Assembly: GCA_964036045.1 (NCBI GenBank)
Contig: OZ038379.1
Span: 13,082,001-13,146,000 of the forward strand
Source of the DNA: Eutreptiella sp. 'Long Island Sound 2002'
Taxonomy: Eukaryota > Protista > Euglenida
Length of the DNA stretch: 64,000 nucleotides
Direction: 5' to 3'
Shown: piece by piece, positions 1-50,448 of the stretch
Numbering within the stretch: position 1 is the first letter of the stretch
How the letters are laid out: every line of letters starts with the position of its first letter
Notes under the pieces: model-generated
Databases searched by the model: none
What the model was told of the DNA's origin: nothing
The model's input: only the letters and a program-made list of their open reading frames with translations
Made by a program: the position numbers and the translations under genes

Positions 1-3000
1 CAGTCCAACAGGGAACATAAGTAAAATCAATGGCACGTCATAGAGCTGGGTAAAATGTCATCCTCCCATCGAACATAAATTTGCAACACCGGAACTAGAA
101 ATATGCAAAAAAGAAAAGGGGATGCACACTTAAATCGTCAAGATCAATCCACTAATCTCCATATCCACTGCACCACTGTTGTTGTTCTGTTCACATTGTC
201 TCTCAAATGAACACAATGCCCTGTGAATCTCACGCTCAATGGGTCTACCAAAGTGAGTCACTCACGTTGGTAACATTACTGTTAGATAGACATGTCATCA
301 CAGCTCAGCTACCTCAGCTACCGAGGCCTTGCGGATCACAGCAGCGTAAAGCCATGGCATGATATCCACGTTGCTTATTGGGTAGATAGATTTACTAGTG
401 TTGCATTTGTTCTTCAACCTGGATATGTCCATCACCACCCACATTCTATCTGCACATCTACCATATTGTATCATTGAAATATAATCGCAGCCACCAGCTG
501 TGCAGATACTTTAGCCAACCCTTTCACAGCCACATGCAGATCCATCTTCCATTCGCCTTTCAGTCCAACAGGGAACACAATTGAAATCATAGTTGGTCAT
601 CGAGCTGGGTAAGGTCTCATCATGGCACTTACATAACACAAACACCTGCATCTGAACACAAAAAGTGTCACCAACAGCAAAGGCGTATCAGATTGAGGAC
701 TGGAAGAATGGGTCACATCATTGCTCAGCAACACTACTCATCATTCGCCACCAAGAAATAGCACCTGCAACATCCCAAACATCGATCTTTCGGAACATGC
801 CTCCGGGAGGGCACACCCACACCTTGTGGCTCAATGAAAGAGTGTAACACAGCCAACACCAGTTCTACGCAATGCCACAAATCCCAATCTCCAATGAGGT
901 GATTCAGCAGTGGTTGAGGACATGTGGAACATCAGCAATCAGCAAATACACAAACTCATCACAACCTCAGTACGTGTAATGGCCATTGATGAAATGCTTA
1001 GGCAGTGGTTCAGGATTGTCTTGACATCATGAACACAAATAGCATAAGTCCCCCTGACAGAAAGCTCACAGGCAGAGACTCTGTGTTGGCAAATACAAAA
1101 CATAAATGCACTGTACAAATCAGACTGACATATGAAGCAACAACACATTCTAACCTCACATGTACAAACATGAAAAAATGCAAACACTGGACAAACCAAA
1201 AGAGCTGGCTAACCTAAATGGCACACGGAGTCAATTGTACGTCTTCTACGCAACATAGCTAAGATTTGATTGTACCAACCTTTCACAAGAGAGAAACAAA
1301 CTCCTAGACAGCTACCATGCATTGTGCATCTGAAAGCCTTCACCACTCTTGGATGTTTTTTGTTTTGTCAGTGTGCCAGTCTGCTCTGTTAAAGCGAGAT
1401 GTATCAATGATGAAAACCAAAACAGACACAGTGTCACCCATGCAGCAGTGGTGCATGGCTGTGCACCTACACCATCAGATTAGTCTGTCCTGCTTGGCTG
1501 GACCCTAGCACAGCAAACGTACCTTACATTGCAACCATTGTGTGCATGTGCACAATGCAACAACACTATCTGCAATATACACAGACAACATTGCATCCCA
1601 TCAGTCAATATTCGTTTAAGCATGTATCGATCAGACAAATGCCTCAAAGCATCACATTTTCTTGGAACCCTTGGCCCACTGGTTTTTCTACACCCTACAG
1701 TGCACACTCAAAATCATCATCTATCTTCTACAGCAACACATACCCCCATCTGATGACACCCAAACAACGACAACAAAGCAACGCATGGCCATGATGCAGG
1801 AATTGTGGCAGGAATGGTTTAACATCAAGCTTCAGCTACAAATTAAAATCCCCATTGCACAATATTACATCCAAATGTACAAATCAACAACCAAGTGTGA
1901 CTCCTAACATCATACCCTAAAAATACAAGCAAGAAAGACACTTGGATACCCTGTTTTTGGATAAGGAGGTGCGATGTCTCAGTCCAACAGGGAACATAAG
2001 TAAAATCAATGGCACGTCATAGAGCTGGGTAAAATGTCATCCTCCCATCGAACATAAATTTGCAACACCGGAACTAGAAATATGCAAAAAAGAAAAGGGG
2101 ATGCACACTTAAATCGTCAAGATCAATCCACTAATCTCCATATCCACTGCACCACTGTTGTTGTTCTGTTCACATTGTCTCTCAAATGAACACAATGCCC
2201 TGTGAATCTCACGCTCAATGGGTCTACCAAAGTGAGTCACTCACGTTGGTAACATTACTGTTAGATAGACATGTCATCATAGCTCAGCTACCTCAGCTAC
2301 CGAGGCCTTGCGGATCACAGCAGCGTAAAGCCATGGCATGATATCCACGTTGCTTATTGGGTAGATAGATTTACTAGTGTTGCATTTGTTCTTCAACCTG
2401 GATATGTCCATCACCACCCACATTCTATCTGCACATCTACCATATTGTATAATTGAAATATAATCGCAGCCACCAGCTGTGCAGATACTTTAGCCAACCC
2501 TTTCACAGCCACATGCAGATCCATCTTCCATTCGCCTTTCAGTCCAACAGGGAACACAATTGAAATCATAATTGGTCATCGAGCTGGGTAAGGTCTCATC
2601 ATGGCGCTTACATAACACAAACAACTGCATCTGAACACAAAAAGTGTCACCAACAGCAAAGACGTATCAGATTGAGGACTGGAAGAATGGGTCACATCAT
2701 TGCTCAGCAACACTACTCATCATTCGCCACCAAGAAATAGCACCTGCAACATCCCAAACATCGATCTTTCGGAACATGCCTCCGGGAGGGCACACCCACA
2801 CCTTGTGGCTCAATGAAAGAGTGTAACACAGCCAACACCAGTTCTACGCAATGCCACAAATCCCAATCTACAATGAGGTGATTCAGCAGTGGTTGAGGAC
2901 GTGTGGAACATCAGCAATCAGCAAATACACAAACTCATCACAACCTCAGTACGTGTAATGGCCATTGATGAAATGCTTAGGCAGTGGTTGAGGATTGTCT

Positions 3001-6000
3001 TGACATCATGAACACAAATAGCATAAGTCCCCCTGACAGAAAGCTCACAGGCAGAGACTCTGTGTTGGCAAATACAAAACATAAATGCACTGTACAAATC
3101 AGACTGACGTATGAAGCAACAACACATTCTAACCTCACATGTACAAACATGAACAAATGCAAACACTGGACAAACCAAAAGAGCTGGCTAACCTAAATGG
3201 CACACGGAGTCAATTGTACGTCTTTTACGCAACATAGCTAAGATTTGATTGTACCAACCTTTCACAAGAGAGAAACAAACTCCTAGCCAGCTACCATGCA
3301 TTGTGCATCTGAAAGCCTTCACCACTCTTGGATGTTTTTTGTTTTGTCAGTGTGCCAGTCTGCTCTGTTAAAGCGAGATGTATCAATGATGAAAACCAAA
3401 ACAGACACAGTGTCACCTATGCAGCAGTGGTGCATGGCTGTGCACCTACACCATCAGATTAGTCTGTCCTGCTTGGCTGGACCCTAGCACAGCAAACGTA
3501 CCTTACATTGCAACCATTGTGTGCATGTGCACAATGCAACAACACTATCTGCAATATACACAGACAACATTGCATCCCATCAGTCAATATTCGTTTAAGC
3601 ATGTATCGATCAGACAAATGCCTCAAAGCATCACATTTTCTTGGAACCCTTGGCCCACTGGTTTTTCTACACTCTACAGTGCACACTCAAAATCATCATC
3701 TATCTTCTACAGCAACACATACCCCCATCTGATGACACCCAAACAACGACAACAAAGCAACGCATGGCCATGATGCAGGAATTGTGGCAGGAATGGTTTA
3801 ACATCAAGCTTCAGCCACAAATTAAAATCCCCATTGCACAATATTACATCCAAATGTACAAATCAACAACCAAGTGTGACTCCTAACATCATGCCCCAAA
3901 AATACAAGCAAGAAAGACACTTGGATACCCTGTTTCTGGATAAGGAGGTGCGATGTCTCAGTCCAACAGGGAACATAAGTAAAATCAATGGCACGTCATA
4001 GAGCTGGGTAAAATGTCATCTTCCCATCGAACATAAATTTGCAACACCGGAACTAGAAATATGCAAAAAAGAAAAGGGGATGCACACTTAAATCGTCAAG
4101 ATCAATCCACTAATCTCCATATCCACTGCACCACTGTTGTTGTTCTGTTCACATTGTCTCTCAAATGAACACAATGCCCTGTGAATCTCACGCTCAATGG
4201 GTCTACCAAAGTGAGTCACTCACGTTGGTAACATTACTGTTAGATAGACATGTCATCACAGCTCAGCTACCTCAGCTACCGAGGCCTTGCGGATCACAGC
4301 AGCGTAAAGCCATGGCATGATATCCACGTTGCTTATTGGGTAGATAGATTTACTAGTGTTGCATTTGTTCTTCAACCTGGATATGTCCATCACCACCCAC
4401 ATTCTATCTGCACATCTACCATATTGTATAATTGAAATATAATCGCAGCCACCAGCTGTGCAGATACTTTAGCCAACCCTTTCACAGCCACATGCAGATC
4501 CATCTTCCATTCGCCTTTCAGTCCAACAGGGAACACAATTGAAATCATAGTTGGTCATCGAGCTGGGTAAGGTCTCATCATGGCACTTACATAACAGAAA
4601 CACCTGCATCTGAACACAAAAAGTGTCACCAACAGCAAAGGCGTATCAGATTGAGGACTGGAAGAATGGGTCACATCATTGCTCAGCAACACTACTCATC
4701 ATTCGCCACCAAGAAATAGCACCTGCAACATCCCAAACATCGATCTTTCGGAACATGCCTCCGGGAGGGCACACCCACACCTTGTGGCTCAATGAAAGAG
4801 TGTAACACAGCCAACACCAGTTCTACGCAATGCCACAAATCCCAATCTCCAATGAGGTGATTCAGCAGTGGTTGAGGACATGTGGAACATCAGCAATCAG
4901 CAAATACACAAACTCATCACAACCTCAGTACGTGTAATGGCCATTGATGAAATGCTTAGGCAGTGGTTGAGGATTGTCTTGACATCATGAACACAAATAG
5001 CATAAGTCCCCCTGACAGAAAGCTCACAGGCAGAGACTCTGTGTTGGCAAATACAAAACATAAATGCACTGTACAAATCAGACTGACGTATGAAGCAACA
5101 ACACATTCTAACCTCACATGTACAAACATGAAAAAATGCAAACACTGGACAAACCAAAAGAGCTGGCTAACCTAAATGGCACACGGAGTCAATTGTACGT
5201 CTTTTACGCAACATAGCTAAGATTTGATTGTACCAACCTTTCACAAGAGAGAAACAAACTCCTAGCCAGCTACCATGCATTGTGCATCTGAAAGCCTTCA
5301 CCACTCTTGGATGTTTTTTGTTTTGTCAGTGTGCCAGTCTGCTCTGTTAAAGCGAGATGTATCAATGATGAAAACCAAAACAGACACAGTGTCACCCATG
5401 CAGCAGTGGTGCATGGCTGTGCACCTACACCATCAGATTAGTCTGTCCTGCTTGGCTGGACCCTAGCACAGCAAACGTACCTTACATTGCAACCATTGTG
5501 TGCATGTGCACAATGCAACAACACTATCTGCAATATACATAGACAACATTGCATCCCATCAGTCAATATTCGTTTAAGCATGTATCGATCAGACAAATGC
5601 CTCAAAGCATCACATTTTCTTGGAACCCTTGGCCCACTGGTTTTTCTACACCCTACAGTGCACACTCAAAATCATCATCTATCTTCTACAGCAACACATA
5701 CCCCCATCTGATGACACCCAAACAACGACAACAAAGCAACGCATGGCCATGATGCAGGAATTGTGGCAGGAATGGTTTAACATCAAGCTTCAGCTACAAA
5801 TTAAAATCCCCATTGCACAATATTACATCCAAATGTACAAATCAACAACCAAGTGTGACTCCTAACATCATACCCTAAAATTACAAGCAAGAAAGACACT
5901 TGGATACCCTGTTTCTGGATAAGGAGGTGCGATGTCTCAGTCCAACAGGGAACATAAGTAAAATCAATGGCACGTCATAGAGCTGGGTAAAATGTCATCC

Positions 6001-9000
6001 TCCCATCGAACATAAATTTGCAACACCGGAACTAGAAATATGCAAAAAAGAAAAGGGGATGCACACTTAAATCGTCAAGATCAATCCACTAATCTCCATA
6101 TCCACTGCACCACTGTTGTTGTTCTGTTCACATTGTCTCTCAAATGAACACAATGCCCTGTGAATCTCACGCTCAATGGGTCTACCAAAGTGAGTCACTC
6201 ACGTTGGTAACATTACTGTTAGATAGACATGTCATCACAGCTCAGCTACCTCAGCTACCGAGGCCTTGCGGATCACAGCAGCGTAAAGCCATGGCATGAT
6301 ATCCACGTTGCTTATTGGGTAGATAGATTTACTAGTGTTGCATTTGTTCTTCAACCTGGATATGTCCATCACCACCCACATTCTATCTGCACATCTACCA
6401 TATTGTATAATTGAAATATAATCGCAGCCACCAGCTGTGCAGATACTTTAGCCAACCCTTTCACAGCCACATGCAGATCCATCTTCCATTCGCCTTTCAG
6501 TCCAACAGGGAACACAATTGAAATCATAGTTGGTCATCGAGCTGGGTAAGGTCTCATCATGGCGCTTACATAACACAAACACCTGCATCTGAACACAAAA
6601 AGTGTCACCAACAGCAAAGGCGTATCAGATTGAGGACTGGAAGAATGGGTCACATCATTGCTCAGCAACACTACTCATCATTCGCCACCAAGAAATAGCA
6701 CCTGCAACATCCCAAACATCGATCTTTCGGAACATGCCTCCGGGAGGGCACACCCACACCTTGTGGCTCAATGAAAGAGTGTAACACAGCCAACACCAGT
6801 TCTACGCAATGCCACAAATCCCAATCTCCAATGAGGTGATTCAGCAGTGGTTGAGGACATGTGGAACATCAGCAATCAGCAAATACACAAACTCATCACA
6901 ACCTCAGTACGTGTAATGGCCATTGATGAAATGCTTAGGCAGTGGTTGAGGATTGTCTTGACATCATGAACACAAATAGCATAAGTCCCCCTGACAGAAA
7001 GCTCACAGGCAGAGACTCTGTGTTGGCAAATACAAAACATAAATGCACTGTACAAATCAGACTGACGTATGAAGCAACAACACATTCTAACCTCACATGT
7101 ACAAACATGAAAAAATGCAAACACTGGACAAACCAAAAGAGCTGGCTAACCTAAATGGCACACGGAGTCAATTGTACGTCTTTTACGCAACATAGCTAAG
7201 ATTTGATTGTACCAACCTTTCACAAGAGAGAAACAAACTCCTAGCCAGCTACCATGCATTGTGCATCTGAAAGCCTTCACCACTCTTGGATGTTTTTTGT
7301 TTTGTCAGTGTGCCAGTCTGCTCTGTTAAAGCGAGATGTATCAATGATGAAAACCAAAACAGACACAGTGTCACCCATGCAGCAGTGGTGCATGGCTGTG
7401 CACCTACACCATCAGATTAGTCTGTCCTGCTTGGCTGGACCCTAGCACAGCAAACGTACCTTACATTGCAACCATTGTGTGCATGTGCACAATGCAACAA
7501 CACTATCTGCAATATACATAGACAACATTGCATCCCATCAGTCAATATTCGTTTAAGCATGTATCGATCAGACAAATGCCTCAAAGCATCACATTTTCTT
7601 GGAACCCTTGGCCCACTGGTTTTTCTACACCCTACAGTGCACACTCAAAATCATCATCTATCTTCTACAGCAACACATACCCCCATCTGATGACACCCAA
7701 ACAACGACAACAAAGCAACGCATGGCCATGATGCAGGAATTGTGGCAGGAATGGTTTAACATCAAGCTTCAGCTACAAATTAAAATCCCCATTGCACAAT
7801 ATTACATCCAAATGTACAAATCAACAACCAAGTGTGACTCCTAACATCATACCCTAAAATTACAAGCAAGAAAGACACTTGGATACCCTGTTTCTGGATA
7901 AGGAGGTGCGATGTCTCAGTCCAACAGGGAACATAAGTAAAATCAATGGCACGTCATAGAGCTGGGTAAAATGTCATCCTCCCATCGAACATAAATTTGC
8001 AACACCGGAACTAGAAATATGCAAAAAAGAAAAGGGGATGCACACTTAAATCGTCAAGATCAATCCACTAATCTCCATATCCACTGCACCACTGTTGTTG
8101 TTCTGTTCACATTGTCTCTCAAATGAACACAATGCCCTGTGAATCTCACGCTCAATGGGTCTACCAAAGTGAGTCACTCACGTTGGTAACATTACTGTTA
8201 GATAGACATGTCATCACAGCTCAGCTACCTCAGCTACCGAGGCCTTGCGGATCACAGCAGCGTAAAGCCATGGCATGATATCCACGTTGCTTATTGGGTA
8301 GATAGATTTACTAGTGTTGCATTTGTTCTTCAACCTGGATATGTCCATCACCACCCACATTCTATCTGCACATCTACCATATTGTATAATTGAAATATAA
8401 TCGCAGCCACCAGCTGTGCAGATACTTTAGCCAACCCTTTCACAGCCACATGCAGATCCATCTTCCATTCGCCTTTCAGTCCAACAGGGAACACAATTGA
8501 AATCATAGTTGGTCATCGAGCTGGGTAAGGTCTCATCATGGCGCTTACATAACACAAACACCTGCATCTGAACACAAAAAGTGTCACCAACAGCAAAGGC
8601 GTATCAGATTGAGGACTGGAAGAATGGGTCACATCATTGCTCAGCAACACTACTCATCATTCGCCACCAAGAAATAGCACCTGCAACATCCCAAACATCG
8701 ATCTTTCGGAACATGCCTCCGGGAGGGCACACCCACACCTTGTGGCTCAATGAAAGAGTGTAACACAGCCAACACCAGTTCTACGCAATGCCACAAATCC
8801 CAATCTCCAATGAGGTGATTCAGCAGTGGTTGAGGACGTGTGGAACATCAGCAATCAGCAAATACACAAACTCATCACAACCTCAGTACGTGTAATGGCC
8901 ATTGATGAAATGCTTAGGCAGTGGTTCAGGATTGTCTTGACATCATGAACACAAATAGCATAAGTCCCCCTGACAGAAAGCTCACAGGCAGAGACTCTGT

Positions 9001-10132
9001 GTTGGCAAATACAAAACATAAATGCACTGTACAAATCAGACTGACGTATGAAGCAACAACACATTCTAACCTCACATGCACAAACATGAAAAAATGCAAA
9101 CACTGGACAAACCAAAAGAGCTGGCTAACCTAAATGGCACACGGAGTCAATTGTACGTCTTCTACGCAAGATAGCTAAGATTTGATTGTACCAACCTTTC
9201 ACAAGAGAGAAACAAACTCCTAGACAGCTACCATGCATTGTGCATCTTAAAGCCTTCACCACTCTTGGATGTTTTTTGTTTTGTCAGTGTGCCAGTCTGC
9301 TCTGTTAAAGCGAGATGTATCAATGATGAAAACCAAAACAGACACAGTGTCACCTATGCAGCAGTGGTGCATGGCTGTGCACCTACACCATCAGATTAGT
9401 CTGTCCTGCTTGGCTGGACCCTAGCACAGCAAACGTACCTTACATTGCAACCATTGTGTGCATGTGCACAATGCAACAACACTATCTGCAATATACACAG
9501 ACAACATTGCATCCCATCAGTCAATATTCGTTTAAGCATGTATCGATCAGACAAATGCCTCAAAGCATCACATTTTCTTGGAACCCTTGGCCCACTGGTT
9601 TTTCTACACCCTACAGTGCACACTCAAAATCATCATCTATCTTCTACAGCAACACATATCCCCATCGGATGACACCCAAACAACGACAACAAAGCAACGC
9701 ATGGCCATGATGCAGGAATTGTGGCAGGAATGGTTTAACATCAAGCTTCAGCTACAAATTAAAATCCCCATTGCACAATATTACATCCAAATGTACAAAT
9801 CAACAACCAAGTGTGACTCCTAACATCATGCCCTAAAAATACAAGCAAGAAAGACACTTGGATACCCTGTTTTTGGATAAGGAGGTGCGATGTCTCAGTC
9901 CAACAGGGAACATAAGTAAAATCAATGGCACGTCATAGAGCTGGGTAAAATGTCATCCTCCCATCGAACATAAATTTGCAACACCGGAACTAGAAATATG
10001 CAAAAAAGAAAAGGGGATGCACACTTAAATCGTCAAGATCAATACACTAATCTCCATATCCACTGTACCATTGTTCTGGTCACATTGTCTCTCACATGAA
10101 CACAATGCCCTGTGAATCTCACGCTCAATGGG
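1..10132 (+). repeat. 1979-bp tandem macrosatellite, type A block (5 full units plus a 237-bp partial unit; open at the left window edge)
   Basis: The anchor cagtccaacagggaacataag recurs at 1, 1980, 3959, 5938, 7917 and 9896 (period 1979). The ORF track repeats with the same period and only scattered substitutions. Homology ends at ...ctcaatggg (10132). Confidence 0.98.
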
Positions 10133-10149
10133 ACACGAGAAAAAACCCC

Positions 10150-10485
10150 TCCCTTCTCGGGGTCAGATCTGGCTGGAATTGCTATGTACCCCTTGTTTTC
10201 CTGGGGGTCCCCAACAAAGGTGACAAAATCAGAAACGGGTACACAACCCGTGCCTCGTCGGGACCCCAAAATTGGGCAGAATTGCTACGTACCCCCTACG
10301 GTCTTGGGATCCCCAGAAAAGGGGACAAAATAAGAAGTGGATGCATAACCCCTGCCCTCTCGGGGGCGAAAACTGGGCAGAATTGCGACGTACACCTTTT
10401 AGGGGCTCCCCAGAGAGGGGTACAAAATCAGAACTGCTCCATAACTCCAGCCTTTTCGGGGGCCCAGAAGTGGGCGAACTTGGGA
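10150..10485 (+). repeat. Degenerate tandem repeat of about 105-110 bp (caaaatcagaa / cccctgcc-tctcgggg / aagtgggc family)
   Basis: Three diverged copies of gaattgc-acgtac...ggggtcccca...caaaatcagaa...; shares motifs with the reverse complement of the 85-bp repeat at 55010-55222. Confidence 0.7.
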
Positions 10486-10840
10486 GGGAGGTAAGGAGGC
10501 AGTGGGGTAGTTTATCAGGGGAGGGGGGGGGGGGGTCATTTGGCAGCCGTCCGTGGTGAGCGGTCCGCCCCAGGGTAGCAATGGCTACAGACACTGTAAT
10601 CCACACACACCGCTCAACTCGTACCGTACTGCTGCACATGATGGTCCACATTGCTTCCGCTCCATTCACCAATCTGCGACCCTTGCAGTTGACAGTTGTG
10701 GGTGGGAGGTGAGGGAGGCGGGGGGGGGGGGGGGGAGGGGGTGCACAGGAAGCAGGAAAGAGGCACAAAGGGCAGACACCCGAAACCAGACCGGCAGCGG
10801 GGGAGCCCAGGGCTGAAGGCTGTCAAGGTCCCATAGGAGC

Positions 10841-11230
10841 GTGGCGGCTCTGCCTGAGCGGACCCAGTGGTCACCCGGCTGTCGAAGCACCCACCAGATG
10901 ACGCCGCAGTTGAGGACGAAGACCCACCGCAGCCGGGCCGGCCATAGGGCGCTGGCGACATTGTTCCGGCCGCGGTGGAAGGCGCGGACGAGGCTACGGA
11001 GCAGAAAGCGCATGTGGGGCACATAGAAGACGAAGCCATCCTCTGTCATGGCCATTTGGAGGGTTCGCTGCGACGTGTCCACGCAGTAGGTGTGCAGCCC
11101 GAGGGCGGGCACGGGGGCGACAGCTTGGCGGGCCTCAGCCATGGTGCGGGAGCAGCAGCAACCAGCAGAGCTCTAGGCACGCGGCAAAAGACCTGCAAGA
11201 CGGGGGCGATGAGAGCATTGGACAATCCCT
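10841..11230 (+). pseudogene. Possible decayed C-terminal fragment of a LINE ORF2
   Basis: One frame with several stops reads ...LRSRKRMWGT*KTKPSSVMAIWRVRCDV..., resembling WAMWSARSAH(W)RYRCE at the end of the zinc-finger region of the 41.8-kb ORF2. Confidence 0.3.
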
Positions 11231-12324
11231 GGTGCCCCTGCGTGTACCTGACTGTCTGTGTGCAGTTAGCATATGGGATCCACTGTCAATCGGCGTTGGT
11301 AAGGCACACGAAACCAACTCGGGCGGGCCCTGCAGGGCTACAGGGGCTGGGAAAATACAGCCCAGTAATCTCGCCACACTTGATATACCCAAAGCCCCAA
11401 GAGCCATACGCCTGAATGCCTCCCAAAAAAAACAGAAAAAGGGTGCAGAAAAAGGAGGCTCCAGAATTTGCAACCCATTGCCACACCATTGGCAGAAAAC
11501 TCTGTTTTTGAGGAGGACAATGTTGATGCAAAAATCCCATCAGGGACCCCACACAAATGCAGAAGTGCATGTGACAGCCTTATGCACAGGCACACATACA
11601 CCCTTGCGCAACCACCAGCAATGCTGCACCGCTTGACCAGCAGGTGGCCATTTTGGACGCTGAACTTTTGACCAGCGGGTGTCCAATGGCCATGGATCCA
11701 ACAGCAGTGTCATAAAATGTGCCCTTTGAACAGGGTGTAGCTGCTCCCCACCCGCACAAAAGACTTTTCCTAACACTGCTGCCCCATCTTGTCCAAACCA
11801 TGCACTGTCTCAGCCACACTCCGCCACACTCCCCAGTGGAACCATTACTATTTTTTGTGCCCCAATTTAATTCGGTAGCATGTCACAGTTCCCCTTGTCA
11901 GTTTTCTTTTTCTTTTTCGTGTGCTGCAATTCTGACAATTTTCTGTTTGGAGGCAAGTTTTTGAATTGTTTGCAATACTCAAATATTTGTGGTTTGCATA
12001 CACCATTTTCATATGCTGAGATACTTGAGATACTTGTGGCTGATATCCCCCCCTTGGCGGAGGTCCTAGGGGGAATCTTTGCACTGCGCGTGCACTGCAC
12101 GCGCACTGCGCGCTACTTTTAGACTATGTTCCCCCTGAAGAGCCCCCAAGCAAACCCCTTGGAAACGCCCTTAGAACTAGGTGACCCAAGCTGCCCCAGC
12201 TCAAGAAACTTGCAAACTCCCTTCCCTTCACATAACACACATCATGCACAACTGGAAAAGCCATGAACAGCGCATTGGTCGCCACCCTCAAGAACACACA
12301 ACTGTCTTTCTGTTCCATTGTCAA

Positions 12325-12555
12325 CTAAGTACACATGGACTCCATCTTGCATTGGCGATTCACCACCCGTAGTGCATCTTGGTAGTACTCCAAGTGGATG
12401 AGCCCATCTCCCGCCATCCCAACCACCGTGGCAGGAACTCGCACGCCATTGGAGCGGGTGTAGAACACCCTATCGCCAAGACTCAAATCCATGAAGAAAG
12501 TGTGTCTAAGAAAGGAGGAGGGGGGTGTGAAGTCCTTTAGCATATGTGCAAGCAC
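12325..12555 (-). other. Short ORF with a Tudor/SH3-like beta pattern, probably part of a repeat
   Basis: MDLSLGDRVFYTRSNGVRVPATVVGMAGDGLIHLEYYQD; fold assignment is by pattern only. Confidence 0.3.
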
Positions 12556-12855
12556 GATAGATCAATGTGTGCACACGAGCACTGCGCCTTGCCATGCCTT
12601 GACACAAACGTGCTACGCCTTGCAAAACCTCCGCTAGGGGTCACCATGATGCCCCTAGGGGCCCCTAGCATCTCAAATCGTATGTGTGCAGGCTGATGTG
12701 CATCGTTCACGTGCTCTCATGCTGGGTTGCTCTAAGCGGGCGCAGAAATACAAGGTACCTGGGCACTGAAAAAGCATTAGTCTCCCCTGCGACGCGCTCA
12801 CAATGCGCAAGTCAATGGGCGCTGACGTTGTAGGCGTGCTCTGCGCCGGGAGCCA

Positions 12856-13700
12856 CTAACATCTGTGGACTTGTGGACTGGATTGAAATCCAGAGTCAAG
12901 TTTGGACCCCGGCGTGAGATGTGGTGGGGTGGGCATGGAGACCAAACCAAGTGCTGTGTGTGGGGAGGGAGGGGTCAGTGGGGGGCTTTCGTCTGCTGTG
13001 TGTAACATGGGGTGTTTGCAAATGTCCTGTGCTGAGGTGCTTGAGGTGGATTGTGGGCTCCTTAGGCGACAGTGTCTGCGCGTTGAAGTGACATCTGTGG
13101 AAAACGAGAATGTCATGCCTGGTGGGGTGAATGTGGTGTCTGGTGTGTGTGGGCTAAGGTCATCATCTTCTGGGCTCGCGAGGACAAAACCATCGCCTTC
13201 TCCGTGTGATGAAGGGGTGGAAGCAACGGACAGAGTCTCGTGACTGGACCCTGGGGCGTGAGCCGCGCTCAAATGTGAGCCACTGTTTGAATCCGACGAG
13301 TGGGGGTCCACGAGTGGGGGAGAAGAGTAATTGCCTGCTGACCGGGTCGGTGGCATCCAGCGGCTTCAAAGGGCTATCGGGTTCACTGGGGGGGCTGCAA
13401 AAAAATGAGGGGGGGGGGGGGGGTTCATCATGGTACAGCACATTCGGCCAGTTCTGCAAGGTCATTTGCTTCCTCATTTCCTGGTATGCCTTGATGCAAG
13501 GGACGCGAAGCCATTCCAGCACTGCTACGTGAGAGTCTAAAAGTGTGCTCCAAAGGTTTGCAAGTGCCAATGGCCTTGTGGTTGTGCACCATCTGCGGGC
13601 ACGCCATTTACAGGCACGGAGCTGTAATGTGGACATGGGGGAGGGGATCTGCTTGATTTTGCAACAGGGTTGCCACCAGTGGGCAGGCCGCACCTAAGGG
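12856..13700 (-). pseudogene. Decayed 3' fragment of an RNase H-bearing LINE (RNase H C-terminal half plus Ser-rich tail)
   Basis: Across frameshifts it reads KWRARRWCTTT...LWSTLL...VLEWLRVP / GIPGNEEANDLAE. The tail contains TFSFSTDVTSTRR, matching TLSFSTDVSDTRR at about 40.66 kb. Confidence 0.75.
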
Positions 13701-14399
13701 GACAAGGATACATGGCTTCTTGAAATGTGCACACCACAGCCTCTCTGTTGCTTACTTCAGGGCCCCTTAGATATTACTTTATTGTCACCAGTCAGCTGAA
13801 CCACTCAACAACTTCGAAGTGCATCTGCGCCCTGGTTTGCCCCTCCGTGTATGACAAATTGTGTGCTCGAAGCTATGGAGGTCTCACACAGCATCTTCCT
13901 ATGCAACACAGTTTCAGTGAATGCTGATTGCATCAATCCAACTTTAGTATCAGCAGCTGAGGAGTGGGAATGCACACTCAGTAAGCAGATGTAGTGTGAC
14001 AGGGCAGGGGATCTGGGCCTGCAATCCCCTGTTTCGGTGTGCTCTCCTGTTCAAAACATGTGTGTGTCTCTTAAACCAGCAGTGCGAAGACCAATTGGTG
14101 CTAAACACCCATCCAATAGAATGCTGGTTTTGGAAAATGGAACTTGGAAAATAGGATGCAAACATGAGCAAATTTTTTGGAGGTGGGAAAGAAAAGGGGG
14201 CGTGGGGTGAATCTAATTTAGATGATAATTGAGAATGAAACAGAAAACCAAATAGCAAATTTAGCAAAAGGAAGCAAATGAGGGAGGGGAGCTGCGCCTG
14301 CCTGCCTGCCACCCAGCGAAACCTTTGTTTGCCCAGTGGGGGGGGGGGGGGGCACTTGCATTGCCCACACTGCATGCACCATGAAAGCTATTTCAACGC

Positions 14400-14769
14400 A
14401 AACAGCCCTATGGGGACTTTGCAAGTGGCGGGTGGCAGGAGAAGGCCTCAGAATCAGTTTGAGAACACAGTGTGCACTCTGCCTCATGATGGAGCACGAG
14501 AGCTGGTACTGCTGTACAACACAGTGTGGGACTCAACTGCCACTGGGCGACGCCCATTCCACAGAGACATGGTCCCATGGGTCGATCCTGCACTGGGTCA
14601 GAAGGCCATCAATGCAGCCAAGAGGGACAGAGGTATCGGTCTCATCGAAGATGAGAGGCAAACTTTGGTTGTTGCGTCCAGACCGCCAACCTCTGATTGT
14701 GTGCACTCTGACGCTTGCGTTTCCGAAAAGCATGTGAAGATGGCCATGGGTGCGGACCCCATGAGGTAG
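14400..14769 (+). other. Protein-like open frame of unknown origin (exon or TE fragment)
   Basis: ORF 14278-14769; the part after the G-run has natural composition (LLYNTVWDSTATGRRPFHRDMVPWVDPALGQKAINAAKRDRG). No motif recognised. Confidence 0.2.
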
Positions 14770-14873
14770 GGGGGCAACATGACATTGGTGGGCAACAAAC
14801 GGGGGAAGGGGGCAATCAGAGGGGAAAAGAAAGCAATAGGCAGTGGGACGAGACGACAGATGGCTGCATGGCG

Positions 14874-17800
14874 CATGTACTAACACGAAAAAATGCAAAC
14901 ACTGGACAAACCAAAAGAGCTGGCTAACCTAAATGGCACACGGAGTCAATTGTACGTCTTTTACGCAACATAGCTAAGATTTGATTGTACCAACCTTTCA
15001 CAAGAGAGAAACAAACTCCTAGCCAGCTACCATGCATTGTGCATCTGAAAGCCTGCACCACTCTTGGATGTTTTGTGTTTTGTCAGTGTGCCAGTCTGCT
15101 CTGTTAAAGCGAGATGTATCAATGATGAAAACCAAAACAGACACAGTGTCACCTATGCAGCAGTGGTACATGGCTGTGCACCTACATCATCAGGTTAGTC
15201 TGTCCTGCTTGGCTGGACCCTAGCACAGCAAACGCACTGAACCACAGTGAATGGGGGTTTGGACCAAGTTGTTGCACTGCGTGCGCACTGCGCGTGCACT
15301 GTGTGGGCACTGTGTGCGCACTGCGTGCATACTGCGCACGCAGAGGCCGGGATACTCACCCAAGAATACCTGTCACCTGACTGGTTGCACAGCGAAGCAC
15401 CAAAGCCCACATGAGAACGACGAAACTGCCTTCAACTTGGTACTCCACTGTCCCTGTGAACAAACCACTCCGCCTTGTAAAGTCCGCTTGCTTCGAGTGT
15501 TTCGGTGCCCGTGGCTTCGCTCTTGGAGGCGGCGATGAGGTGTCCCTTGACTCGGAGCGTGGGGAATGCGTTGTCCGTGGTGTCTTGGGTGATGGGGACC
15601 GCGAATAGGGTGAATAGGAGGGCGGTGGTGATTCTGAGTGTGGTCGCAACACACTTATTGATGGCGAGCGAGGTGAGTGATGTGGTGGGGATGAAGGCCG
15701 TACCACAAACTCCTCAAGGTCCGCGGGCTATGTATGGCTACATCACCCGTGCCTTCTCGGGGTCCCCATAGTGGGGAGAGTTCAATATGGGGGGCAAAAA
15801 ATGGGTAAAAATGGTTGACATTGGGCAACAAAGGGTGACAATTCAAATGTGCCACATCCCAAATGCATAGGAAGCTGAAAAAGACCTCAGTATGGAACCA
15901 AAAACTTGTCAAAAGGGGCCAAAAGTGGGATCGGAGTATTGGCTGAAAATCAAAACTTCGTACTGCGTGTGCACTGCGTGCATGGCATTCCCTTGGAAGT
16001 ATTCCCCTAACCAAACCCAGCGACTCTATGGGGTATTTGTGAGTTACATTGCAACCATTGTGTGCATGTACACAATGCAACAACACTATCTGCAATATAC
16101 GCAGACAACATTGCATCCCATCAGTCAATATTCGTTTAAGCATGTATCGATCAGACAAATGCCTCAAAGCATCACATTTTCTTGGAACCCTTGGCCCACT
16201 GGTTTTTCTACACTCTACAGTGCACACTCAAAATCATCATCTATCTTCTACAGCAACACATACCCCCATCTGATGACACCCAAACAACGACAACAAAGCA
16301 ACGCATGGCCATGATGCAGGAATTGTGGCAGGAATGGTTTAACATCAAGCTTCAGCCACAAATTAAAATCCCCATTGCACAATAGTAGATCCAAATGTAC
16401 AAATCAACAACCAAGTGTAACTCCTAACATCATGCCCCAAAAATACAAGCAAGAAAGACACTTGGATACCCTGTTTCTGGATAAGGAGGTGCGATGTCTC
16501 AGTCCAACAGGGAACATAAGTAAAATCAATGGCACGTCATAGAGCTGGGTAAAATGTCATCTTCCCATCGAACATAAATTTGCAACACCGGAACTAGAAA
16601 TATGCAAAAAAGAAAAGGGGATGCACACTTAAATCGTCAAGATCAATCCACTAATCTCCATATCCACTGTACCACTGTTGTTGTTCTGTTCACATTGTCT
16701 CTCAAATGAACACAATGCCCTGTGAATCTCATGCTCAATGGGTCTACCAAAGTGAGTCACTCACGTTGGTAACATTATTGTTAGATAGACATGTAATCAC
16801 AGCTCAGCTACCTCAGCTACCGAGGCCTTGCGGATCACAGCAGCGTAAAGCCATGGCATGATATCCACGTTGCTTATTGGGTAGATAGATTTACTAGTGT
16901 TGCATTTGTTCTTCAACCTGGATATGTCCATCACCACCCACATTCTATCTGCACATCTACCATATTGTATAATTGAAATATAATCGCAGCCACCAGCTGT
17001 GCAGATACTTTAGCCAACCCTTTCACAGCCACATGCAGATCCATCTTCCATTCGCCTTTCAGTCCAACAGGGAACACAATTGAAATCTTAGTTGGTCATC
17101 GAGCTGGGTAAGGTCTCATCATGGCGCTTACATAACACAAACACCTGCATCTGAACACAAAAAGTGTCACCAACAGCAAAGGCGTATCAGATTGAGGACT
17201 GGAAGAATGGGTCACATCATTGCTCAGCAACACTACTCATCATTCGCCACCAAGAAATAGCACCTGCAACATCCCAAACATTGATCTTTCGGAACATGCC
17301 TCCGGGAGGGCACACCCACACCTTGTGGCTCAATGAAAGAGTGTAACACAGCCAACACCAGTTCTACGCAATGCCACAAATCCCAATCTACAATGAGGTG
17401 ATTCAGCAGTGGTTGAGGACGTGTGGAACATCAGCAATCAGCAAATACACAAACTCATCACAACCTCAGTACGTGTAATGGCCATTGATGAAATGCTTAG
17501 GCAGTGGTTCAGGATTGTCTTGACATCATCAACATAAACTGTACAAATGAAACAGACGTATGAAGCAACAACACATTCTAACCTCACATGTACAAACATG
17601 AAAAAATGCAAACACTGGACAAACCAAAAGAGCTGGGTAGCCTAAATGGCACACGGAGTCAATTGTACGTCTTTTACACAACATAGCTAAGATTTGATTG
17701 TACCAACCTTTCACAAGAGAGAAACAAACTCCTAGCCAGCTACCATGCATTGTGCACCTGAAAGCCTGCACCACTCTTGGATGTTTTGTGTTTTGTCAGT

Positions 17801-20800
17801 GTGCCAGTCTGCTCTGTTAAAGCGAGATGTATCAATGATGAAAACCAAAACACACACAGTGTCACCCGTGCAGCAGTGGTACATGGCTGTCCAACTACAT
17901 CATCAGGTTAGTCTGTCCTGCTTGGCTGGACCCTAGCACAGCAAACGTACTGAACCACAGTGAATTGGGGCTTGGTGGCATTCCCCTCACCAAACCAAGC
18001 GACTCTATGGGGTATTTGTGAGTTACATTGCAACCATTGTGTGCATGTGCACAATGCAACAACACTATCTGCAATATACACAGACAACATTGCATCCTAT
18101 CAGTCAATATTCGTTTAAGCATGTATCGATCAGACAAATGCCTCAAAGCATCACATTTTCTTGGAACCTTTGGCCCACTGGGTTTTCTACACCCTACAGT
18201 GCACACTCAAAATCATCATCTATCTTCTACAGCAACACATACCCCCATCTGATGACACCCAAACAACGACAACAAAGCAACGCATGGCCATGATGCAGGA
18301 ATTGTGGCAGGAATGGTTTAACATCAAGCTTCAGCCACAAATTAAAATCCCCATTGCACAATATTAGATCCAAATGTACAAATCAACAACCAAGTGTAAC
18401 TCCTAACATCATGCCCTAAAAATACAAGCAAGAAAGACACTTGGATACCCTGTTTCTGGATAAGGAGGTGCGATGTCTCAGTCCAACAGGGAACATAAGT
18501 AAAATCAATGGCACGTCATAGAGCTGGGTAAAATGTCATCTTCCCATCGAACATAAATTTGCAACACCGGAACTAGAAATATGCAAAAAAGAAAAGGGGA
18601 TGCACACTTAAATCGTCAAGATCAATCCACTAATCTCCATATCCACTGTACCACTGTTGTTGTTCTGTTCACATTGTCTCTCAAATGAACACAATGCCCT
18701 GTGAATCTCACGCTCAATGGGTCTACCAAAGTGAGTCACTCACGTTGGTAACATTATTGTTAGATAGATATGTAATCACAGCTCAGCTACCTCAGCTACC
18801 GAGGCCTTGCGGATCACAGCAGCGTAAAGCCATGGCATGATATCCACGTTGCTTATTGGGTAGATAGATTTACTAGCGTTGCATTTGTTCTTCAACCTGG
18901 ATATGTCCATCACCACCCACATTCTATCTGCACATCTACCATATTGTATAATTGAAATATAATCGCAGCCACCAGCTGTGCAGATACTTTAGCCAACCCT
19001 TTCACAGCCACATGCAGATCCATCTTCCATTCGCCTTTCAGTCCAACAGGGAACACAATTGAAATCATAGTTGGTCATCGAGCTGGGTAAGGTCTCATCA
19101 TGGCGCTTACATAACACAAACACCTGCATCTGAACACAAAAAGTGTCACCAACAGCAAAGACGTATCAGATTGAGGACTGGAAGAATGGGTCACATCATT
19201 GCTCAGCAACACTACTCATCATTCGCCACCAAGAAATAGCACCTGCAACATCCCAAACATTGATCTTTCGGAACATGCCTCCGGGAGGGCACATCCACAC
19301 CTTGTGGCTCAATGAAAGAGTGTAACACAGCCAACACCAGTTCTACGCAATGCCACAAATCCCAATCTACAATGAGGTGATTCAGCAGTGGTTGAGGACG
19401 TGTGGAACATCAGCAATCAGCAAATACACAAACTCATCACAACCTCAGTACGTGTAATGGCCATTGATGAAATGCTTAGGCAGTGGTTCAGGATTGTCTT
19501 GACATCATCAACATAAACTGTACAAATGAAACAGACGTATGAAGCAACAACACATTCTAACCTCACATGTACAAACAGGAACAAATGCAAACACTGGACA
19601 AACCAAAAGAGCTGGCTAGCCTAAATGGCACACGGAGTCAATTGTACGTCTTTTACACAACATAGCTAAGATTTGATTGTACCAACCTTTCACAAGAGAG
19701 AAACAAACTCCTAGCCAGCTAACATGCATTGTGCACCTGAAAGCCTGCACCACTCTTGGATGTCTTTTGTTTTGTCAGTGTGCCAGTCTGCTCTGTTAAA
19801 GCGAGATGTATCAATGATGAAAACCAAAACACACACAGTGTCACCCGTGCAGCAGTGGTACATGGCTGTCCAACTACATCATCAGGTTAGTCTGTCCTGC
19901 TTGGCTGGACCCTAGCACAGCAAACGTACTGAACCACAGTGAATTGGGGCTTGGTGGCATTCCCCTCACCAAACCAAGCGACTCTATGGGGTATTTGTGA
20001 GTTACATTGCAACCATTGTGTGCATGTGCACAATGCAACAACACTATCTGCAATATACACAGACAACATTGCATCCTATCAGTCAATATTCGTTTAAGCA
20101 TGTATCGATCAGACAAATGCCTCAAAGCATCACATTTTCTTGGAACCTTTGGCCCACTGGGTTTTCTACACTCTACAGTGCACACTCAAAATCATCATCT
20201 ATCTTCTACAGCAACACATACCCCCATCGGATGACACCCAAACAACGACAACAAAGCAACGCATGGCCATGATGCAGGAATTGTGGCAGGAATGGTTTAA
20301 CATCAAGCTTCAGCCACAAATTGAAATCCCCATTGCACAATATTACATCCAAATGTACAAATCAACAACCAAGTGTAACTCCTAACATCATGCCCCAAAA
20401 ATACAAGCAAGAAAGACACTTGGATACCCTGTTTCTGGATAAGGAGGTGCGATGTCTCAGTCCAACAGGGAACATAAGTAAAATCAATGGCACGTCATAG
20501 AGCTGGGTAAAATGTCATCCTCCCATCGAACATAAATTTGCAACACCGGAACTAGAAATATGCAAAAAAGAAAAGGGGATGCACACTTAAATCGTCAAGA
20601 TCAATCCACTAATCTCCATATCCACTGTACCACTGTTGTTGTTCTGTTCACATTGTCTCTCAAATGAACACAATGCCCTGTGAATCTCACGCTCAATGGG
20701 TCTACCAAAGTGAGTCACTCACGTTGGTAACATTATTGTTAGATAGACATGTCATCACAGCTCAGCTACCTCAGCTACCGAGGCCTTGCGGATCACAGCA

Positions 20801-23800
20801 GCGTAAAGCCATGGCATGATATCCACGTTGCTTATTGGGCAGATAGATTTACTAGCGTTGCATTTGTTCTTCAACCTGGATATGTCCATCACCACCCACA
20901 TTCTATCTGCACATCTACCATATTGTATCATTGAAATCTTATCGCAGCCACCAGCTGTGCAGATACTTTAGCCAACCCTTTCACAGCCACATGCAGATCC
21001 ATCTTCCATTCGCCTTTCAGTCCAACAGGGAACACAATTGAAATCTTAGTTGGTCATCGAGCTGGGTAAGGTCTCATCATGGCGCTTACATAACACAAAC
21101 ACCTGCATCTGAACACAAAAAATGTCACCAACAGCAAAGGCGTATCAGATTGAGGACTGGAAGAATGGGTCACATCATTGCTCAGCAACACTACTCATCA
21201 TTCGCCACCAAGAAATAGCACCTGCAACATCCCAAACATTGATCTTTCAGAACATGCCTCCGGGAGGGCACACCCACACCTTGTGGCTCAATGAAAGAGT
21301 GTAACACAGCCAACACCAGTTCTACGCAATGCCACAAATCCCAATCTACAATGAGGTGATTCAGCAGTGGTTGAGGACGTGTGGAACATCAGCAATCAGC
21401 AAATACACAAACTCATCACAACCTCAGTACGTGTAATGGCCATTGATGAAATGCTTAGGCAGTGGTTCAGGATTGTCTTGACATCATCAACATAAACTGT
21501 ACAAATGAAACAGACGTATGAAGCAACAACACATTCTAACCTCACATGTACAAACAGGAACAAATGCAAACACTGGACAAACCAAAAGAGCTGGCTAGCC
21601 TAAATGGCACACGGAGTCAATTGTACGTCTTTTACACAACATAGCTAAGATTTGATTGTACCAACCTTTCACAAGAGAGAAACAAACTCCTAGCCAGCTA
21701 CCATGCATTGTGCATCTGAAAGCCTGCACCACTCTTGGATGTTTTGTGTTTTGTCAGTGTGCCAGTCTGCTCTGTTAAAGCGAGATGTATCAATGATGAA
21801 AACCAAAACACACACAGTGTCACCCGTGCAGCAGTGGTACACGGCTGTCCAACTACATCATCAGGTTAGTCTGTCCTGCTTGGCTGGACCCTAGCACAGC
21901 AAACGTACTGAACCACAGTGAATTGGGGCTTGGAAGCATTCCCCTCACCAAACCAAGCGACTCTATGGGGTATTTTTGAGTTACATTGCAACCATTGTGT
22001 GCATGTGCACAATGCAACAACACTATCTGCAATATACACAGACAACATTGCATCCTATCAGTCAATATTCGTTTAAGCATGTATCGATCAGACAAATGCC
22101 TCAAAGCATCACATTTTCTTGGAACCCTTGGCCCACTGGGTTTTCTACACTCTACAGTGCACACTCAAAATCATCATCTATCTTCTACAGCAACACATAC
22201 CCCCATCTGATGACACCCAAAAAATGACAACAAAGCAACGCATGGCCATGATGCAGGAATTGTGGCAGGAATGGTTTAACATCAAGCTTCAGCCACAAAT
22301 TAAAATCCCCATTGCACAATATTAGATCCAAATGTACAAATCAACAACCAAGTGTAACTCCTAACATCATGCCCCAAAAATACAAGCAAGAAAGACACTT
22401 GGATACCCTGTTTCTGGATAAGGAGGTGCGATGTCTCAGTCCAACAGGGAACATAAGTAAAATCAATGGCACGTCATAGAGCTGGGTAAAATGTCATCCT
22501 CCCATCGAACATAAATTTGCAACACCGGAACTAGAAATATGCAAAAAAGAAAAGGGGATGCACACTTAAATCGTCAAGATCAATCCACTAATCTCCATAT
22601 CCACTGTGCCACTGTTGTTGTTCTGTTCACATTGTCTCTCAAATGAACACAATGCCCTGTGAATCTCACGCTCAATGGGTCTACCAAAGTGAGTCACTCA
22701 CGTTGGTAACATTATTGTTAGATAGACATGTCATCACAGCTCAGCTACCGAGGCCTTGCGGATCACAGCAGCGTAAAGCCATGGCATGATATCCACGTTG
22801 CTTATTGGGTAGATAGATTTACTAGTGTTGCATTTGTTCTTCAACCTGGATATGTCCATCACCACCCACATTCTATCTGCACATCTACCATATTGTATCA
22901 TTGAAATATAATCGCAGCCACCAGCTGTGCAGATACTTTAGCCAACCCTTTCACAGCCACATGCAGATCCATCTTCCATTCGCCTTTCAGTCCAACAGGG
23001 AACACAATTGAAATCATAGTTGGTCATCGAGCTGGGTAAGGTCTCATCATGGCGCTTACATAACACAAACACCTGCATCTGAACACAAAAAGTGTCACCA
23101 ACAGCAAAGGCGTATCAGATTGAGGACTGGAAGAATGGGTCACATCATTGCTCAGCAACACTACTCATCATTCGCCACCAAGAAATAGCACCTGCAACAT
23201 CCCAAACATTGATCTTTCGGAACATGCCTCCGGGAGGGCACACCCACACCTTGTGGCTCAATGAAAGAGTGTAACACAGCCAACACCAGTTCTACGCAAT
23301 GCCACAAATCCCAATCTACAATGAGGTGATTCAGCAGTGGTTGAGGACGTGTGGAACATCAGCAATCAGCAAATACACAAACTCATCACAACCTCAGTAC
23401 GTGTAATGGCCATTGATGAAATGCTTAGGCAGTGGTTCAGGATTGTCTTGACATCATCAACATAAACTGTACAAATGAAACAGACGTATGAAGCAACAAC
23501 ACATTCTAACCTCACATGTACAAACAGGAACAAATGCAAACACTGGACAAACCAAAAGAGCTGGCTAGCCTAAATGGCACACGGAGTCAATTGTACGTCT
23601 TTTACACAACATAGCTAAGATTTGATTGTACCAACCTTTCACAAGAGAGAAACAAACTCCTAGCCAGCTAACATGCATTGTGCACCTGAAAGCCTGCACC
23701 ACTCTTGGATGTCTTTTGTTTTGTCAGTGTGCCAGTCTGCTCTGTTAAAGCGAGATGTATCAATGATGAAAACCAAAACACACACAGTGTCACCCGTGCA

Positions 23801-47032: not shown

Positions 47033-47112
47033 GCGGTCAGGGGACAAGGAGGTGGCGTCGGCGACAGTTTGTCAAGGCCCAGCGGCCCGGGCAAGCATGG
47101 ACAAAAAGACAC

Positions 47113-47139
47113 CGAGAAAAAAATAGACACTCAGAAAGC
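47113..47139 (-). other. Genomic copy of the euglenid spliced-leader exon
   Basis: Minus strand GCTTTCTGAGTGTCTATTTTTTTCTCG versus the Euglena SL exon as I recall it, ACTTTCTGAGTGTCTATTTTTTTTCG. It lies 14 nt upstream of the ATG at 47098. Confidence 0.9.
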
Positions 47140-50270: not shown

Positions 50271-50448
50271 TAGGGCAAGAAAAAAATATGATCGCACAAT
50301 ATGATAGTAGCAGCAGCAATTCGAACCGCCGCAGATGTGTGAATCATTGTTGTGCCCCCACCCAAGGACAGTCTCGGGTAACGTGAAACCACATAGGTAC
50401 TGTGGGTGGTGGGATGGATAAGTGCAGGGCTCTCAAAAGCCGGAGTCA

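What the first reader, a model, noticed from the sequence alone, without database searches (positions are those of the whole stretch)
1031..18022. Two satellite variants with exactly compensating 71-bp indels keep a 1979-bp period
Seen: type A has 71 bp (1040-1110) absent from B. Type B has 71 extra bp (17951-18022 versus a single base at 1523) absent from A. The sites are about 410 bp apart and both units are 1979 bp. ORF landmarks confirm it (665/665, 1317/1246, 1529/1529). Inference: either a 2050-bp ancestor lost equal lengths twice, or unit length is constrained (1979 is about 11 x 180, compatible with nucleosome phasing or in-register exchange). The 1970-bp variants show any constraint is not absolute.
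Basis: partly seen in the sequence, partly recalled or inferred. Interest (0 to 1): 0.75.

Follow-up and report, generated by a model that had tools for sequence, protein, structure and literature searches.

The report
Equal-length satellite variants, by coincidence
Two versions of a 2-kb tandem repeat in a Euglena-type genome do differ by a 71-letter gain at one site and a 71-letter loss at another, but a third, longer version makes up a third of the same array, so the equal length looks like chance rather than a rule.

Summary
Type A units (window 1-10132) carry 71 bp (1040-1110) that type B lacks. Type B units (15992-32648) carry 72 bp (17951-18022) where A has one base (C1523). The sites lie 413 bp apart and both units are 1979 bp.

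The constraint reading does not hold.
- The same 86-kb array, just upstream of the window, has 13 contiguous type C units of 2086-2097 bp.
- Other units are 1970, 1980 and 1981 bp.
- The 1979-bp lattice is broken by 667 bp at the A|B spacer.
- The unit has no 180-bp sub-period.
- The family has about 70 units in two loci, and one locus is a 99% segmental duplicate of the other.

A's 71 bp is what remains (22 + 49 bp) of a 185-bp foreign block. That block is intact in C and in one relic unit, and it has three dispersed homologues elsewhere. The 72 bp is native to the unit and was lost once in the A/C lineage. One relic unit carries both segments and would measure 2164 bp, not 2050.

Best reading: three independent indels (+185, -71, -114 or -107) happen to sum to zero, at roughly 0.4% a priori, and local homogenisation then spread each type. 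This is an ordinary macrosatellite. The contig is euglenid, not human.

The parts
1..10132 (+). Type A sub-array: five full 1979-bp units (1-9895) plus a degenerate 237-bp stub that ends at unit position 243. It continues upstream of the window for 10 more A units, then 13 type C units.
1040..1110 (+). The 71 bp present in A and absent in B. It recurs at the same unit position in every A unit of the window (four more copies, 1979 bp apart). It equals bases 1-22 plus 137-185 of a 185-bp block that is intact in type C and in the relic 'long' unit.
1523..1523 (+). Single C in A (and C) units where B units have 72 bp. This is the deletion scar at site 2.
10133..14873 (.). 4.7 kb of non-satellite DNA (GC about 0.53 against 0.43) that joins A unit position 243 to B unit position 1088. 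It acts as a barrier between the two sub-arrays and breaks the 1979-bp lattice by 667 bp.
14874..15262 (+). Left part of the first, truncated B unit (unit positions 1088-1476). It ends inside the 72-bp segment.
15263..15991 (+). 729-bp copy of an abundant dispersed element inserted into the 72-bp segment. Unit positions 1472-1476 are repeated on both sides, which is a putative 5-bp target-site duplication.
15992..32648 (+). Type B sub-array: the rest of the first unit, eight full units (1979 x6, 1970 x2) and a 335-bp end piece that stops at unit position about 344.
17538..17539 (+). Empty site 1 in the first full B unit (no 185-bp block and no 71-bp remnant). The boundaries are the same as in the dispersed and relic copies L004 and L001:2414-3043.
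17951..18022 (+). The 72 bp present in B and absent in A. It recurs in every B unit. It is also present in the relic units and in dispersed copies 84-91% identical, so it is ancestral to the unit.

Best explanation
This is an ordinary macrosatellite whose sub-arrays were each homogenised locally by unequal exchange or duplication of neighbouring units. Three independent length changes happen to cancel.

Shown:
- The native unit carried the 72-bp segment and had an empty site 1. That is the B layout, at 1979 bp.
- A 185-bp block occupies site 1 in one relic unit that still has the 72 bp (2164-bp equivalent).
- The A/C lineage has a 72-to-1-bp replacement at site 2, giving type C (2086-2097 bp, 13 units).
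- Type A is type C minus an internal 107 bp of the block (114 bp measured on the 185-bp relic version). This leaves 22 + 49 = 71 bp and brings the unit back to 1979 bp.
- A and B now sit on opposite sides of a 4.7-kb foreign spacer.

Inferred:
- The order of events: block insertion, then loss of the 72 bp, then the internal deletion.
- The block is foreign DNA.
- The equality of the two lengths is coincidence, not selection or mechanism.
For: - Unit census of both arrays: 1979 x41, 2097 x6, 2086 x5, 1970 x4, 2093 x2, 1981 x2, 1980 x1. Types are strictly contiguous: A x3, C x13, A x15, spacer, B x9.
- Genome-wide junction counts: A deletion junction 35, intact-block junction 14 (13 C + 1 relic), 72-bp-absent junction 49, 72-bp-present junction 20. 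All are in the two C2 loci, the nearby relics, or one dispersed fragment that is present twice through a duplication.
- The relic unit has both segments.
- The block has three dispersed homologues (77-88% identity) with unrelated flanks, which span the point where A is deleted.
- The 72 bp is present in every independent copy that covers site 2, including one only 84-90% identical.
- In the tree the first split separates 72-bp-bearing units (B + relic) from 72-bp-less units (A + C), and neighbouring units cluster together.
- Small indels (+11, -10, -9, -7, -4, +2) change unit length freely.
- A random internal deletion of a 185-bp block leaves exactly 71 bp with probability about 0.4%. That is small, but unremarkable for a feature picked out of a scan of very many windows.
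Against: - An exact return to the ancestral length after +185, -71 and -114 is a priori unlikely (about 1 in 240).
- The length-restoring type A is the most amplified type (35 of about 69 units).
- One A unit also shows a near-compensating +11/-10 pair.
- Site 1 is homoplastic on the tree: the block is present in the relic and in A/C but absent in B. At least one exchange, or a precise loss of the block, must be assumed.
- All counts come from one assembly. No reads were examined.
Confidence: 0.8

Rival explanations
1. Unit length is under constraint. A period of 1979 bp (about 11 nucleosome repeats, or a length needed for in-register exchange or array function) is favoured, so the internal deletion that restored 1979 bp in type A was selected or preferentially amplified.
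For: A and B have exactly equal lengths despite three large indels. Type A is the most abundant type. One unit has a +11/-10 near-compensation.
Against: - 13 contiguous units of 2086-2097 bp persisted, amplified and changed length further (2086, 2093, 2097). Units of 1970, 1980 and 1981 bp also exist.
- The start-to-start distance across the A|B spacer is 6604 = 3 x 1979 + 667, so no common lattice exists.
- The unit has no 180-bp or multiple periodicity.
- There are only about 70 units in two loci, one a duplicate of the other. That is not the scale of a centromeric satellite.
Confidence: 0.07
2. The literal first-reader model: a 2050-bp ancestor carrying both 71-bp segments lost 71 bp twice, once in each lineage.
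For: A copy with material at both sites exists.
Against: - No 2050-bp unit exists. The copy with both has 185 bp at site 1 (2164-bp equivalent).
- The 71 bp of A is a deletion remnant of that block.
- B lacks the whole block, with the same boundaries as the dispersed copies.
- The intact-block junction occurs 14 times genome-wide, but only once together with the 72 bp.
Confidence: 0.05
3. Type B descends from a block-bearing, 72-bp-bearing unit like the relic. It lost the block in one step by gene conversion from a diverged block-less copy, which restored the ancestral 1979 bp at that site. This is a variant of the main explanation.
For: - B groups with the relic on the tree and shares its states at ref 171, 301, 383, 399, 783, 1011 and at 1439-1523.
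- B has 10-12 private substitutions clustered between ref 1031 and 1425, around site 1.
Against: The 1110-1522 segment is richer in private changes in every lineage (relic 7, L004 7). My own estimate is that B's excess is only borderline: 10 of 14 private changes fall there, against an expected fraction of about 0.47. No donor copy was found.
Confidence: 0.25
4. Assembly artefact: collapsed or mis-polished repeats produce spurious uniform unit lengths or a spurious second array.
For: The two arrays are 99.1% identical over at least 68 kb on one 193-Mb contig. Long tandem arrays are hard to assemble.
Against: Units carry many private substitutions and form a spatially ordered tree. The junctions are exact in 35, 14, 49 and 20 copies. 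The two arrays differ in unit number and in private variants.
Confidence: 0.03

Closest known systems
Macrosatellite arrays of kilobase units with array-specific variants (for example human D4Z4 and DXZ4; named from general knowledge, not compared here)
   Same: Head-to-tail units of about 2 kb, tens of copies, few loci, a duplicated locus elsewhere on the chromosome, variants grouped in contiguous blocks, transposon insertions inside the array.
   Different: Different organism (euglenid) and no sequence relation. No long open reading frame in the unit (longest 86 codons). No function known.
Concerted evolution of tandem repeats by unequal crossing-over and gene conversion (Smith 1976; Dover's molecular drive; satellite subfamily or 'library' models; general knowledge)
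   Same: Each sub-array is internally homogeneous (98-99.5%). Diagnostic indels are fixed within a block. Neighbouring units are the most similar. A foreign spacer separates two blocks that diverged. A 3949-bp dimer pattern (1979 + 1970) appears in the B block.
   Different: Nothing that departs from the model was found. The equal length of A and B is not predicted by it, and it does not need to be.
Length-conserved, nucleosome-sized centromeric satellites (about 171-bp alpha satellite, about 180-bp plant satellites; general knowledge)
   Same: Only the arithmetic: 1979 is about 11 x 180.
   Different: No sub-repeat of that size, low copy number, a broad set of unit lengths, and a broken lattice.

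Membership tests
Tandem macrosatellite evolving by local homogenisation | Head-to-tail units of 1 kb or more with one dominant period | tested here: met
   1979-bp spacing for 15,638 20-mers. 61 full units were extracted from two arrays.
Tandem macrosatellite evolving by local homogenisation | Variants occupy contiguous blocks and are not interspersed | tested here: met
   The order is A x3, C x13, A x15, spacer, B x9. No unit has a mixed or 'neither' state.
Tandem macrosatellite evolving by local homogenisation | Neighbouring units are more alike than distant ones, with mosaic units at block borders | tested here: met
   The tree groups units by position. The left A units nest among C units and share C's 11-bp insertion.
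Length-constrained (nucleosome-phased or centromeric) satellite | Narrow unit-length distribution across the array | tested here: not met
   Units of 1970, 1979, 1980, 1981, 2086, 2093 and 2097 bp. 13 of 39 units in array 1 exceed 2080 bp.
Length-constrained (nucleosome-phased or centromeric) satellite | Internal periodicity at the nucleosome repeat | tested here: not met
   Autocorrelation at 180, 360, 540, 720 and 900 bp lies within about 1 sd of expectation. The only internal repeat is one 53-bp pair.
Length-constrained (nucleosome-phased or centromeric) satellite | High copy number at chromosome-scale loci | tested here: not met
   About 70 units (about 140 kb) in a 2.28-Gb assembly, all on one contig in two loci that are duplicates of each other.
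Length-constrained (nucleosome-phased or centromeric) satellite | Phased nucleosomes or centromeric histone occupancy | not testable with these tools
   Needs MNase-seq or ChIP data.
Transposon-derived satellite (amplified LINE fragment, as another first-stage note proposes) | Recognisable similarity of the unit to LINE proteins or DNA | tested here: inconclusive
   tblastn of the window's LINE ORF1, ORF2 and RNase H tail against A, B and relic units gave nothing better than E = 4.9. blastn gave nothing. Only the right flank of the array has a weak ORF1 match (E = 0.017). Other LINE families were not tried.

The most novel reading that the evidence does not exclude
The 1979-bp period is favoured in this array, for chromatin phasing or for efficient in-register exchange. 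Under this reading the internal deletion that brought type A back to exactly the ancestral length is why A out-amplified the longer type C.
Probability: 0.06. Interest if true: 0.6.

Novelty: new member of a known kind. Interest (0 to 1): 0.15.

Why it matters
If the equal length reflected a constraint, it would be rare direct evidence that the length of a kilobase-scale repeat unit is selected. The evidence points the other way. The same array tolerates and amplifies units 107-118 bp longer, so the case mainly illustrates how independent indels plus local homogenisation can mimic compensation. What remains useful is a fully resolved history of a small euglenid macrosatellite: foreign block capture, two deletions, a transposon barrier and a segmental duplication. 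It could serve as a clean example of concerted evolution in a little-studied genome.

Tried and rejected
- A 71-bp piece that simply moved 413 bp. Rejected: the two segments do not align on either strand.
- The 72-bp segment as a hairpin-prone or RNA-like element. Its fold is no better than shuffles (z = +1.1).
- The 185-bp block as a known RNA family. No Rfam match at E <= 1 for its dispersed homologue, and none at gathering score anywhere in the window.
- The 72 bp as a degenerate copy of the 185-bp block. They share one 15-of-16 match (score 25 against a shuffle maximum of 23), but the dispersed homologues match a different spot. This is too weak to use.
- The higher A-B divergence of the 413-bp middle segment (4.4% against 1.0-1.7%) as proof of a block swap. 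The segment is more variable in every lineage, so this stays only a possibility.
- LINE origin of the unit. No protein or DNA similarity to the window's LINE.
- First MAFFT run timed out and was repeated with faster settings.
Reading 47110-47140 on the minus strand shows a leader-like TTTCTGAGTGTCTATTTTTTTCTCG.
Full report
**What the genome is.** The window is C2:13,082,001-13,146,000 of a 2.28-Gb assembly of 2,317 contigs. I take the contig for a euglenid and not for human. The longest chromosome of the published E. gracilis assembly is 121 Mb (PMC11252322), shorter than this 193-Mb contig. The window therefore comes from another assembly or species, and I leave the species open.

**Checking the observation.** Spacing of 20-mers peaks at 1979 bp (15,638) and 1970 bp (3,221). 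BLAST of the first unit against the window shows the following:
- Five gapless 1979-bp A units lie at 1-9895, followed by a 237-bp stub.
- Every unit from 16500 to 32313 aligns as ref 1-1039, then 1110-1522, then 1524-1979.
- B therefore lacks 71 bp (ref 1040-1110) and carries 72 bp in place of base C1523 (17951-18022 in the first full unit).
- The net change is zero and both units are 1979 bp.

The reverse search with a B unit agrees. The two segments are unrelated on either strand.

**Layout in the window.** A and B do not alternate. The A units end at unit position 243 (10132). Then come 4.7 kb of GC-richer foreign DNA (10133-14873). The array resumes at B unit position 1088 (14874). The 72-bp segment of that first B unit is split by a 729-bp insert (15263-15991), with unit positions 1472-1476 repeated on both sides. 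That insert is a full copy of a dispersed element with at least 3,600 first-look candidates at 93-95% identity. The start-to-start distance across the spacer is 6604 = 3 x 1979 + 667, so A and B do not share one lattice.

**The whole array.** I fetched 194 kb around the window and 80 kb of a second locus. Array 1 runs from about C2:13,028,356 to 13,114,648. Its unit order is:
- A x3;
- 13 units of a third type, C (2086 x5, 2097 x6, 2093 x2);
- A x15;
- the spacer;
- B x9.

Type C has a 178-bp block at site 1 and lacks the 72 bp.

Array 2 (C2:122,252,536-122,305,497) has A x17, the same spacer with the same 729-bp insert, and B x7. It is part of a duplicate of at least 68 kb that is 99.1% identical to array 1 and its right flank. 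The A/B pair is therefore a single historical instance.

The 61 full units measure 1979 x41, 2097 x6, 2086 x5, 1970 x4, 2093 x2, 1981 x2 and 1980 x1.

Genome-wide junction counts:

| Junction | Count | Where |
|---|---|---|
| A internal-deletion junction | 35 | 18 in array 1, 17 in array 2 |
| Intact-block junction | 14 | 13 type C, 1 relic |
| 72-bp-absent junction | 49 | both arrays |
| 72-bp-present junction | 20 | arrays, relics, one duplicated dispersed fragment |

No unit lacks both segments. Exactly one unit has both.

**What the two segments are.** A relic unit 75 kb downstream (L001:5399-7495) has 185 bp at site 1 and also the 72 bp at site 2. A's 71 bp equals bases 1-22 plus 137-185 of that block. 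The internal 114 bp (107 bp in the 178-bp type C version) is missing, and the junction can be slid by only 1 bp, next to an AGCT/AAGCT repeat.

The block has three dispersed homologues (C18 twice, C20; 77-88% identity). Their homology covers only the block, spans A's deletion point, and has unrelated flanks. The block is also GC-richer than the unit. I infer that it is foreign DNA captured at site 1, and that the empty site is the older state. The empty site has identical boundaries in B, in a second relic (L001:2414-3043) and in a dispersed fragment (L004, which equals L005).

The 72 bp has no copies outside satellite-derived sequence. It is present in every independent copy that covers site 2, including L003, which is 84-90% identical. 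It is therefore native to the unit and was lost once, in the ancestor of A and C.

**Order of events.** A tree on 1,885 shared columns first splits 72-bp-bearing units (B plus the relic) from 72-bp-less units (A plus C). Within each side, units cluster by position. The left A units nest among C units and share C's 11-bp insertion.

The simplest history is:
1. the native unit (empty site 1, 72 bp present, 1979 bp);
2. +185 bp, giving the relic type (2164 bp);
3. -71 bp net at site 2, giving type C, which then changed by -7, +11 and -4 bp;
4. -107 or -114 bp inside the block, giving type A (1979 bp).

B either kept the empty site or regained it by exchange with a block-less copy. The second option is hinted at by 10-12 private B substitutions between ref 1031 and 1425. 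That stretch is more variable in all lineages, so the hint is weak.

**Constraint or coincidence.** These points weigh against a constraint:
- A third of array 1 is 107-118 bp longer, was itself amplified, and kept changing length.
- Small indels are tolerated.
- The lattice is broken at the spacer.
- There is no autocorrelation at 180 bp or its multiples.
- The family is tiny and confined to two duplicated loci.

These points favour a constraint:
- The exact return to 1979 bp has a probability of about 0.4% if the internal deletion is placed at random in the block.
- A is the most amplified type.
- One unit has a +11/-10 pair.

The feature was picked out of a very large scan, and there is only one independent instance. 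I therefore rate coincidence at about 0.8 and a real length preference at about 0.06.

**Comparison with known kinds.** The array behaves as a textbook macrosatellite under concerted evolution: contiguous variant blocks, positional clustering, mosaic border units, a transposon barrier and a segmental duplicate. It fails every testable criterion of a length-constrained, nucleosome-sized centromeric satellite. I found no link between the unit and the window's LINE, so the other first-stage note on a LINE origin (s1-206664) is not supported by this limited test. I did not examine reads, other strains or chromatin data. Those are the decisive steps.

Noticed in passing
window 15263-15991: A complete 729-bp copy of a very abundant dispersed element (at least 3,600 first-look candidates, 93-95% identical, discrete ends) sits inside the 72-bp segment of the first B unit, with a 5-bp duplication of unit positions 1472-1476. 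It has an 11-bp GCACTGCGTGC-type tandem motif near its 5' end and looks like a short non-autonomous transposon.
   Followed up: partly
window 1-47000 and upstream (C2:13,061,286-13,129,076) versus C2:122,256,126-122,320,000: A segmental duplication of at least 68 kb at 99.1% identity on the same 193-Mb contig, 109 Mb apart. It carries the A array, the spacer, the B array and the right flank. Its left breakpoint lies inside an A unit (unit position 1429). It could be a true duplication or a misplaced haplotype.
   Followed up: partly
L004 (C2:122,549,001-122,558,000) and L005 (C2:9,780,001-9,789,000): Two 8.5-kb stretches 98-99% identical to each other, each holding the same 1.1-kb B-like fragment of the satellite unit (positions 739-1884) on the minus strand. 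This is another large duplicate pair.
   Followed up: no
L001:6369-6553; L018:4653-4828; L019:4447-4640; L020:3976-4115: A low-copy element of about 185-210 bp (77-88% identity between copies) that supplied the block at site 1. It has no Rfam match and its nature is unknown. In L018 it abuts another very abundant repeat (L018:4830-5128, more than 3,200 candidates).
   Followed up: partly
unit positions 1110-1522 (e.g. window 1110-1522, 17539-17950): The 413 bp between the two indel sites carries two to five times more lineage-private substitutions than the rest of the unit in every lineage, most strongly in B (ref 1121-1425). It may be a hypervariable stretch, or one shielded from homogenisation by the flanking heterologies.
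   Followed up: partly
L011:278-420 (unit starting C2:13,031,054): One A unit of 1980 bp carries the 11-bp insertion typical of the 2097-bp C units plus a private 10-bp deletion 60 bp downstream. This is a second near-compensation and a mosaic of A and C features.
   Followed up: yes
window 20458-28355: In the B block the unit lengths run 1979, 1970, 1979, 1970, with a 3949-bp k-mer spacing. A two-unit higher-order repeat was duplicated.
   Followed up: no
C2:13,028,356-13,029,388 (L010:6356-7388): The left end of array 1 is degenerate. Unit positions 16-79 (97%) and 95-265 (84%) are separated by about 700 bp of other DNA, before regular units begin at position 316.
   Followed up: no
window 50447-50715; 55005-55222; 54116-54837: Other tandem repeats outside the satellite: (CAGAA) x54, an 85-bp unit x2.6 (96% matches), and a 367-bp unit x2.
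   Followed up: no
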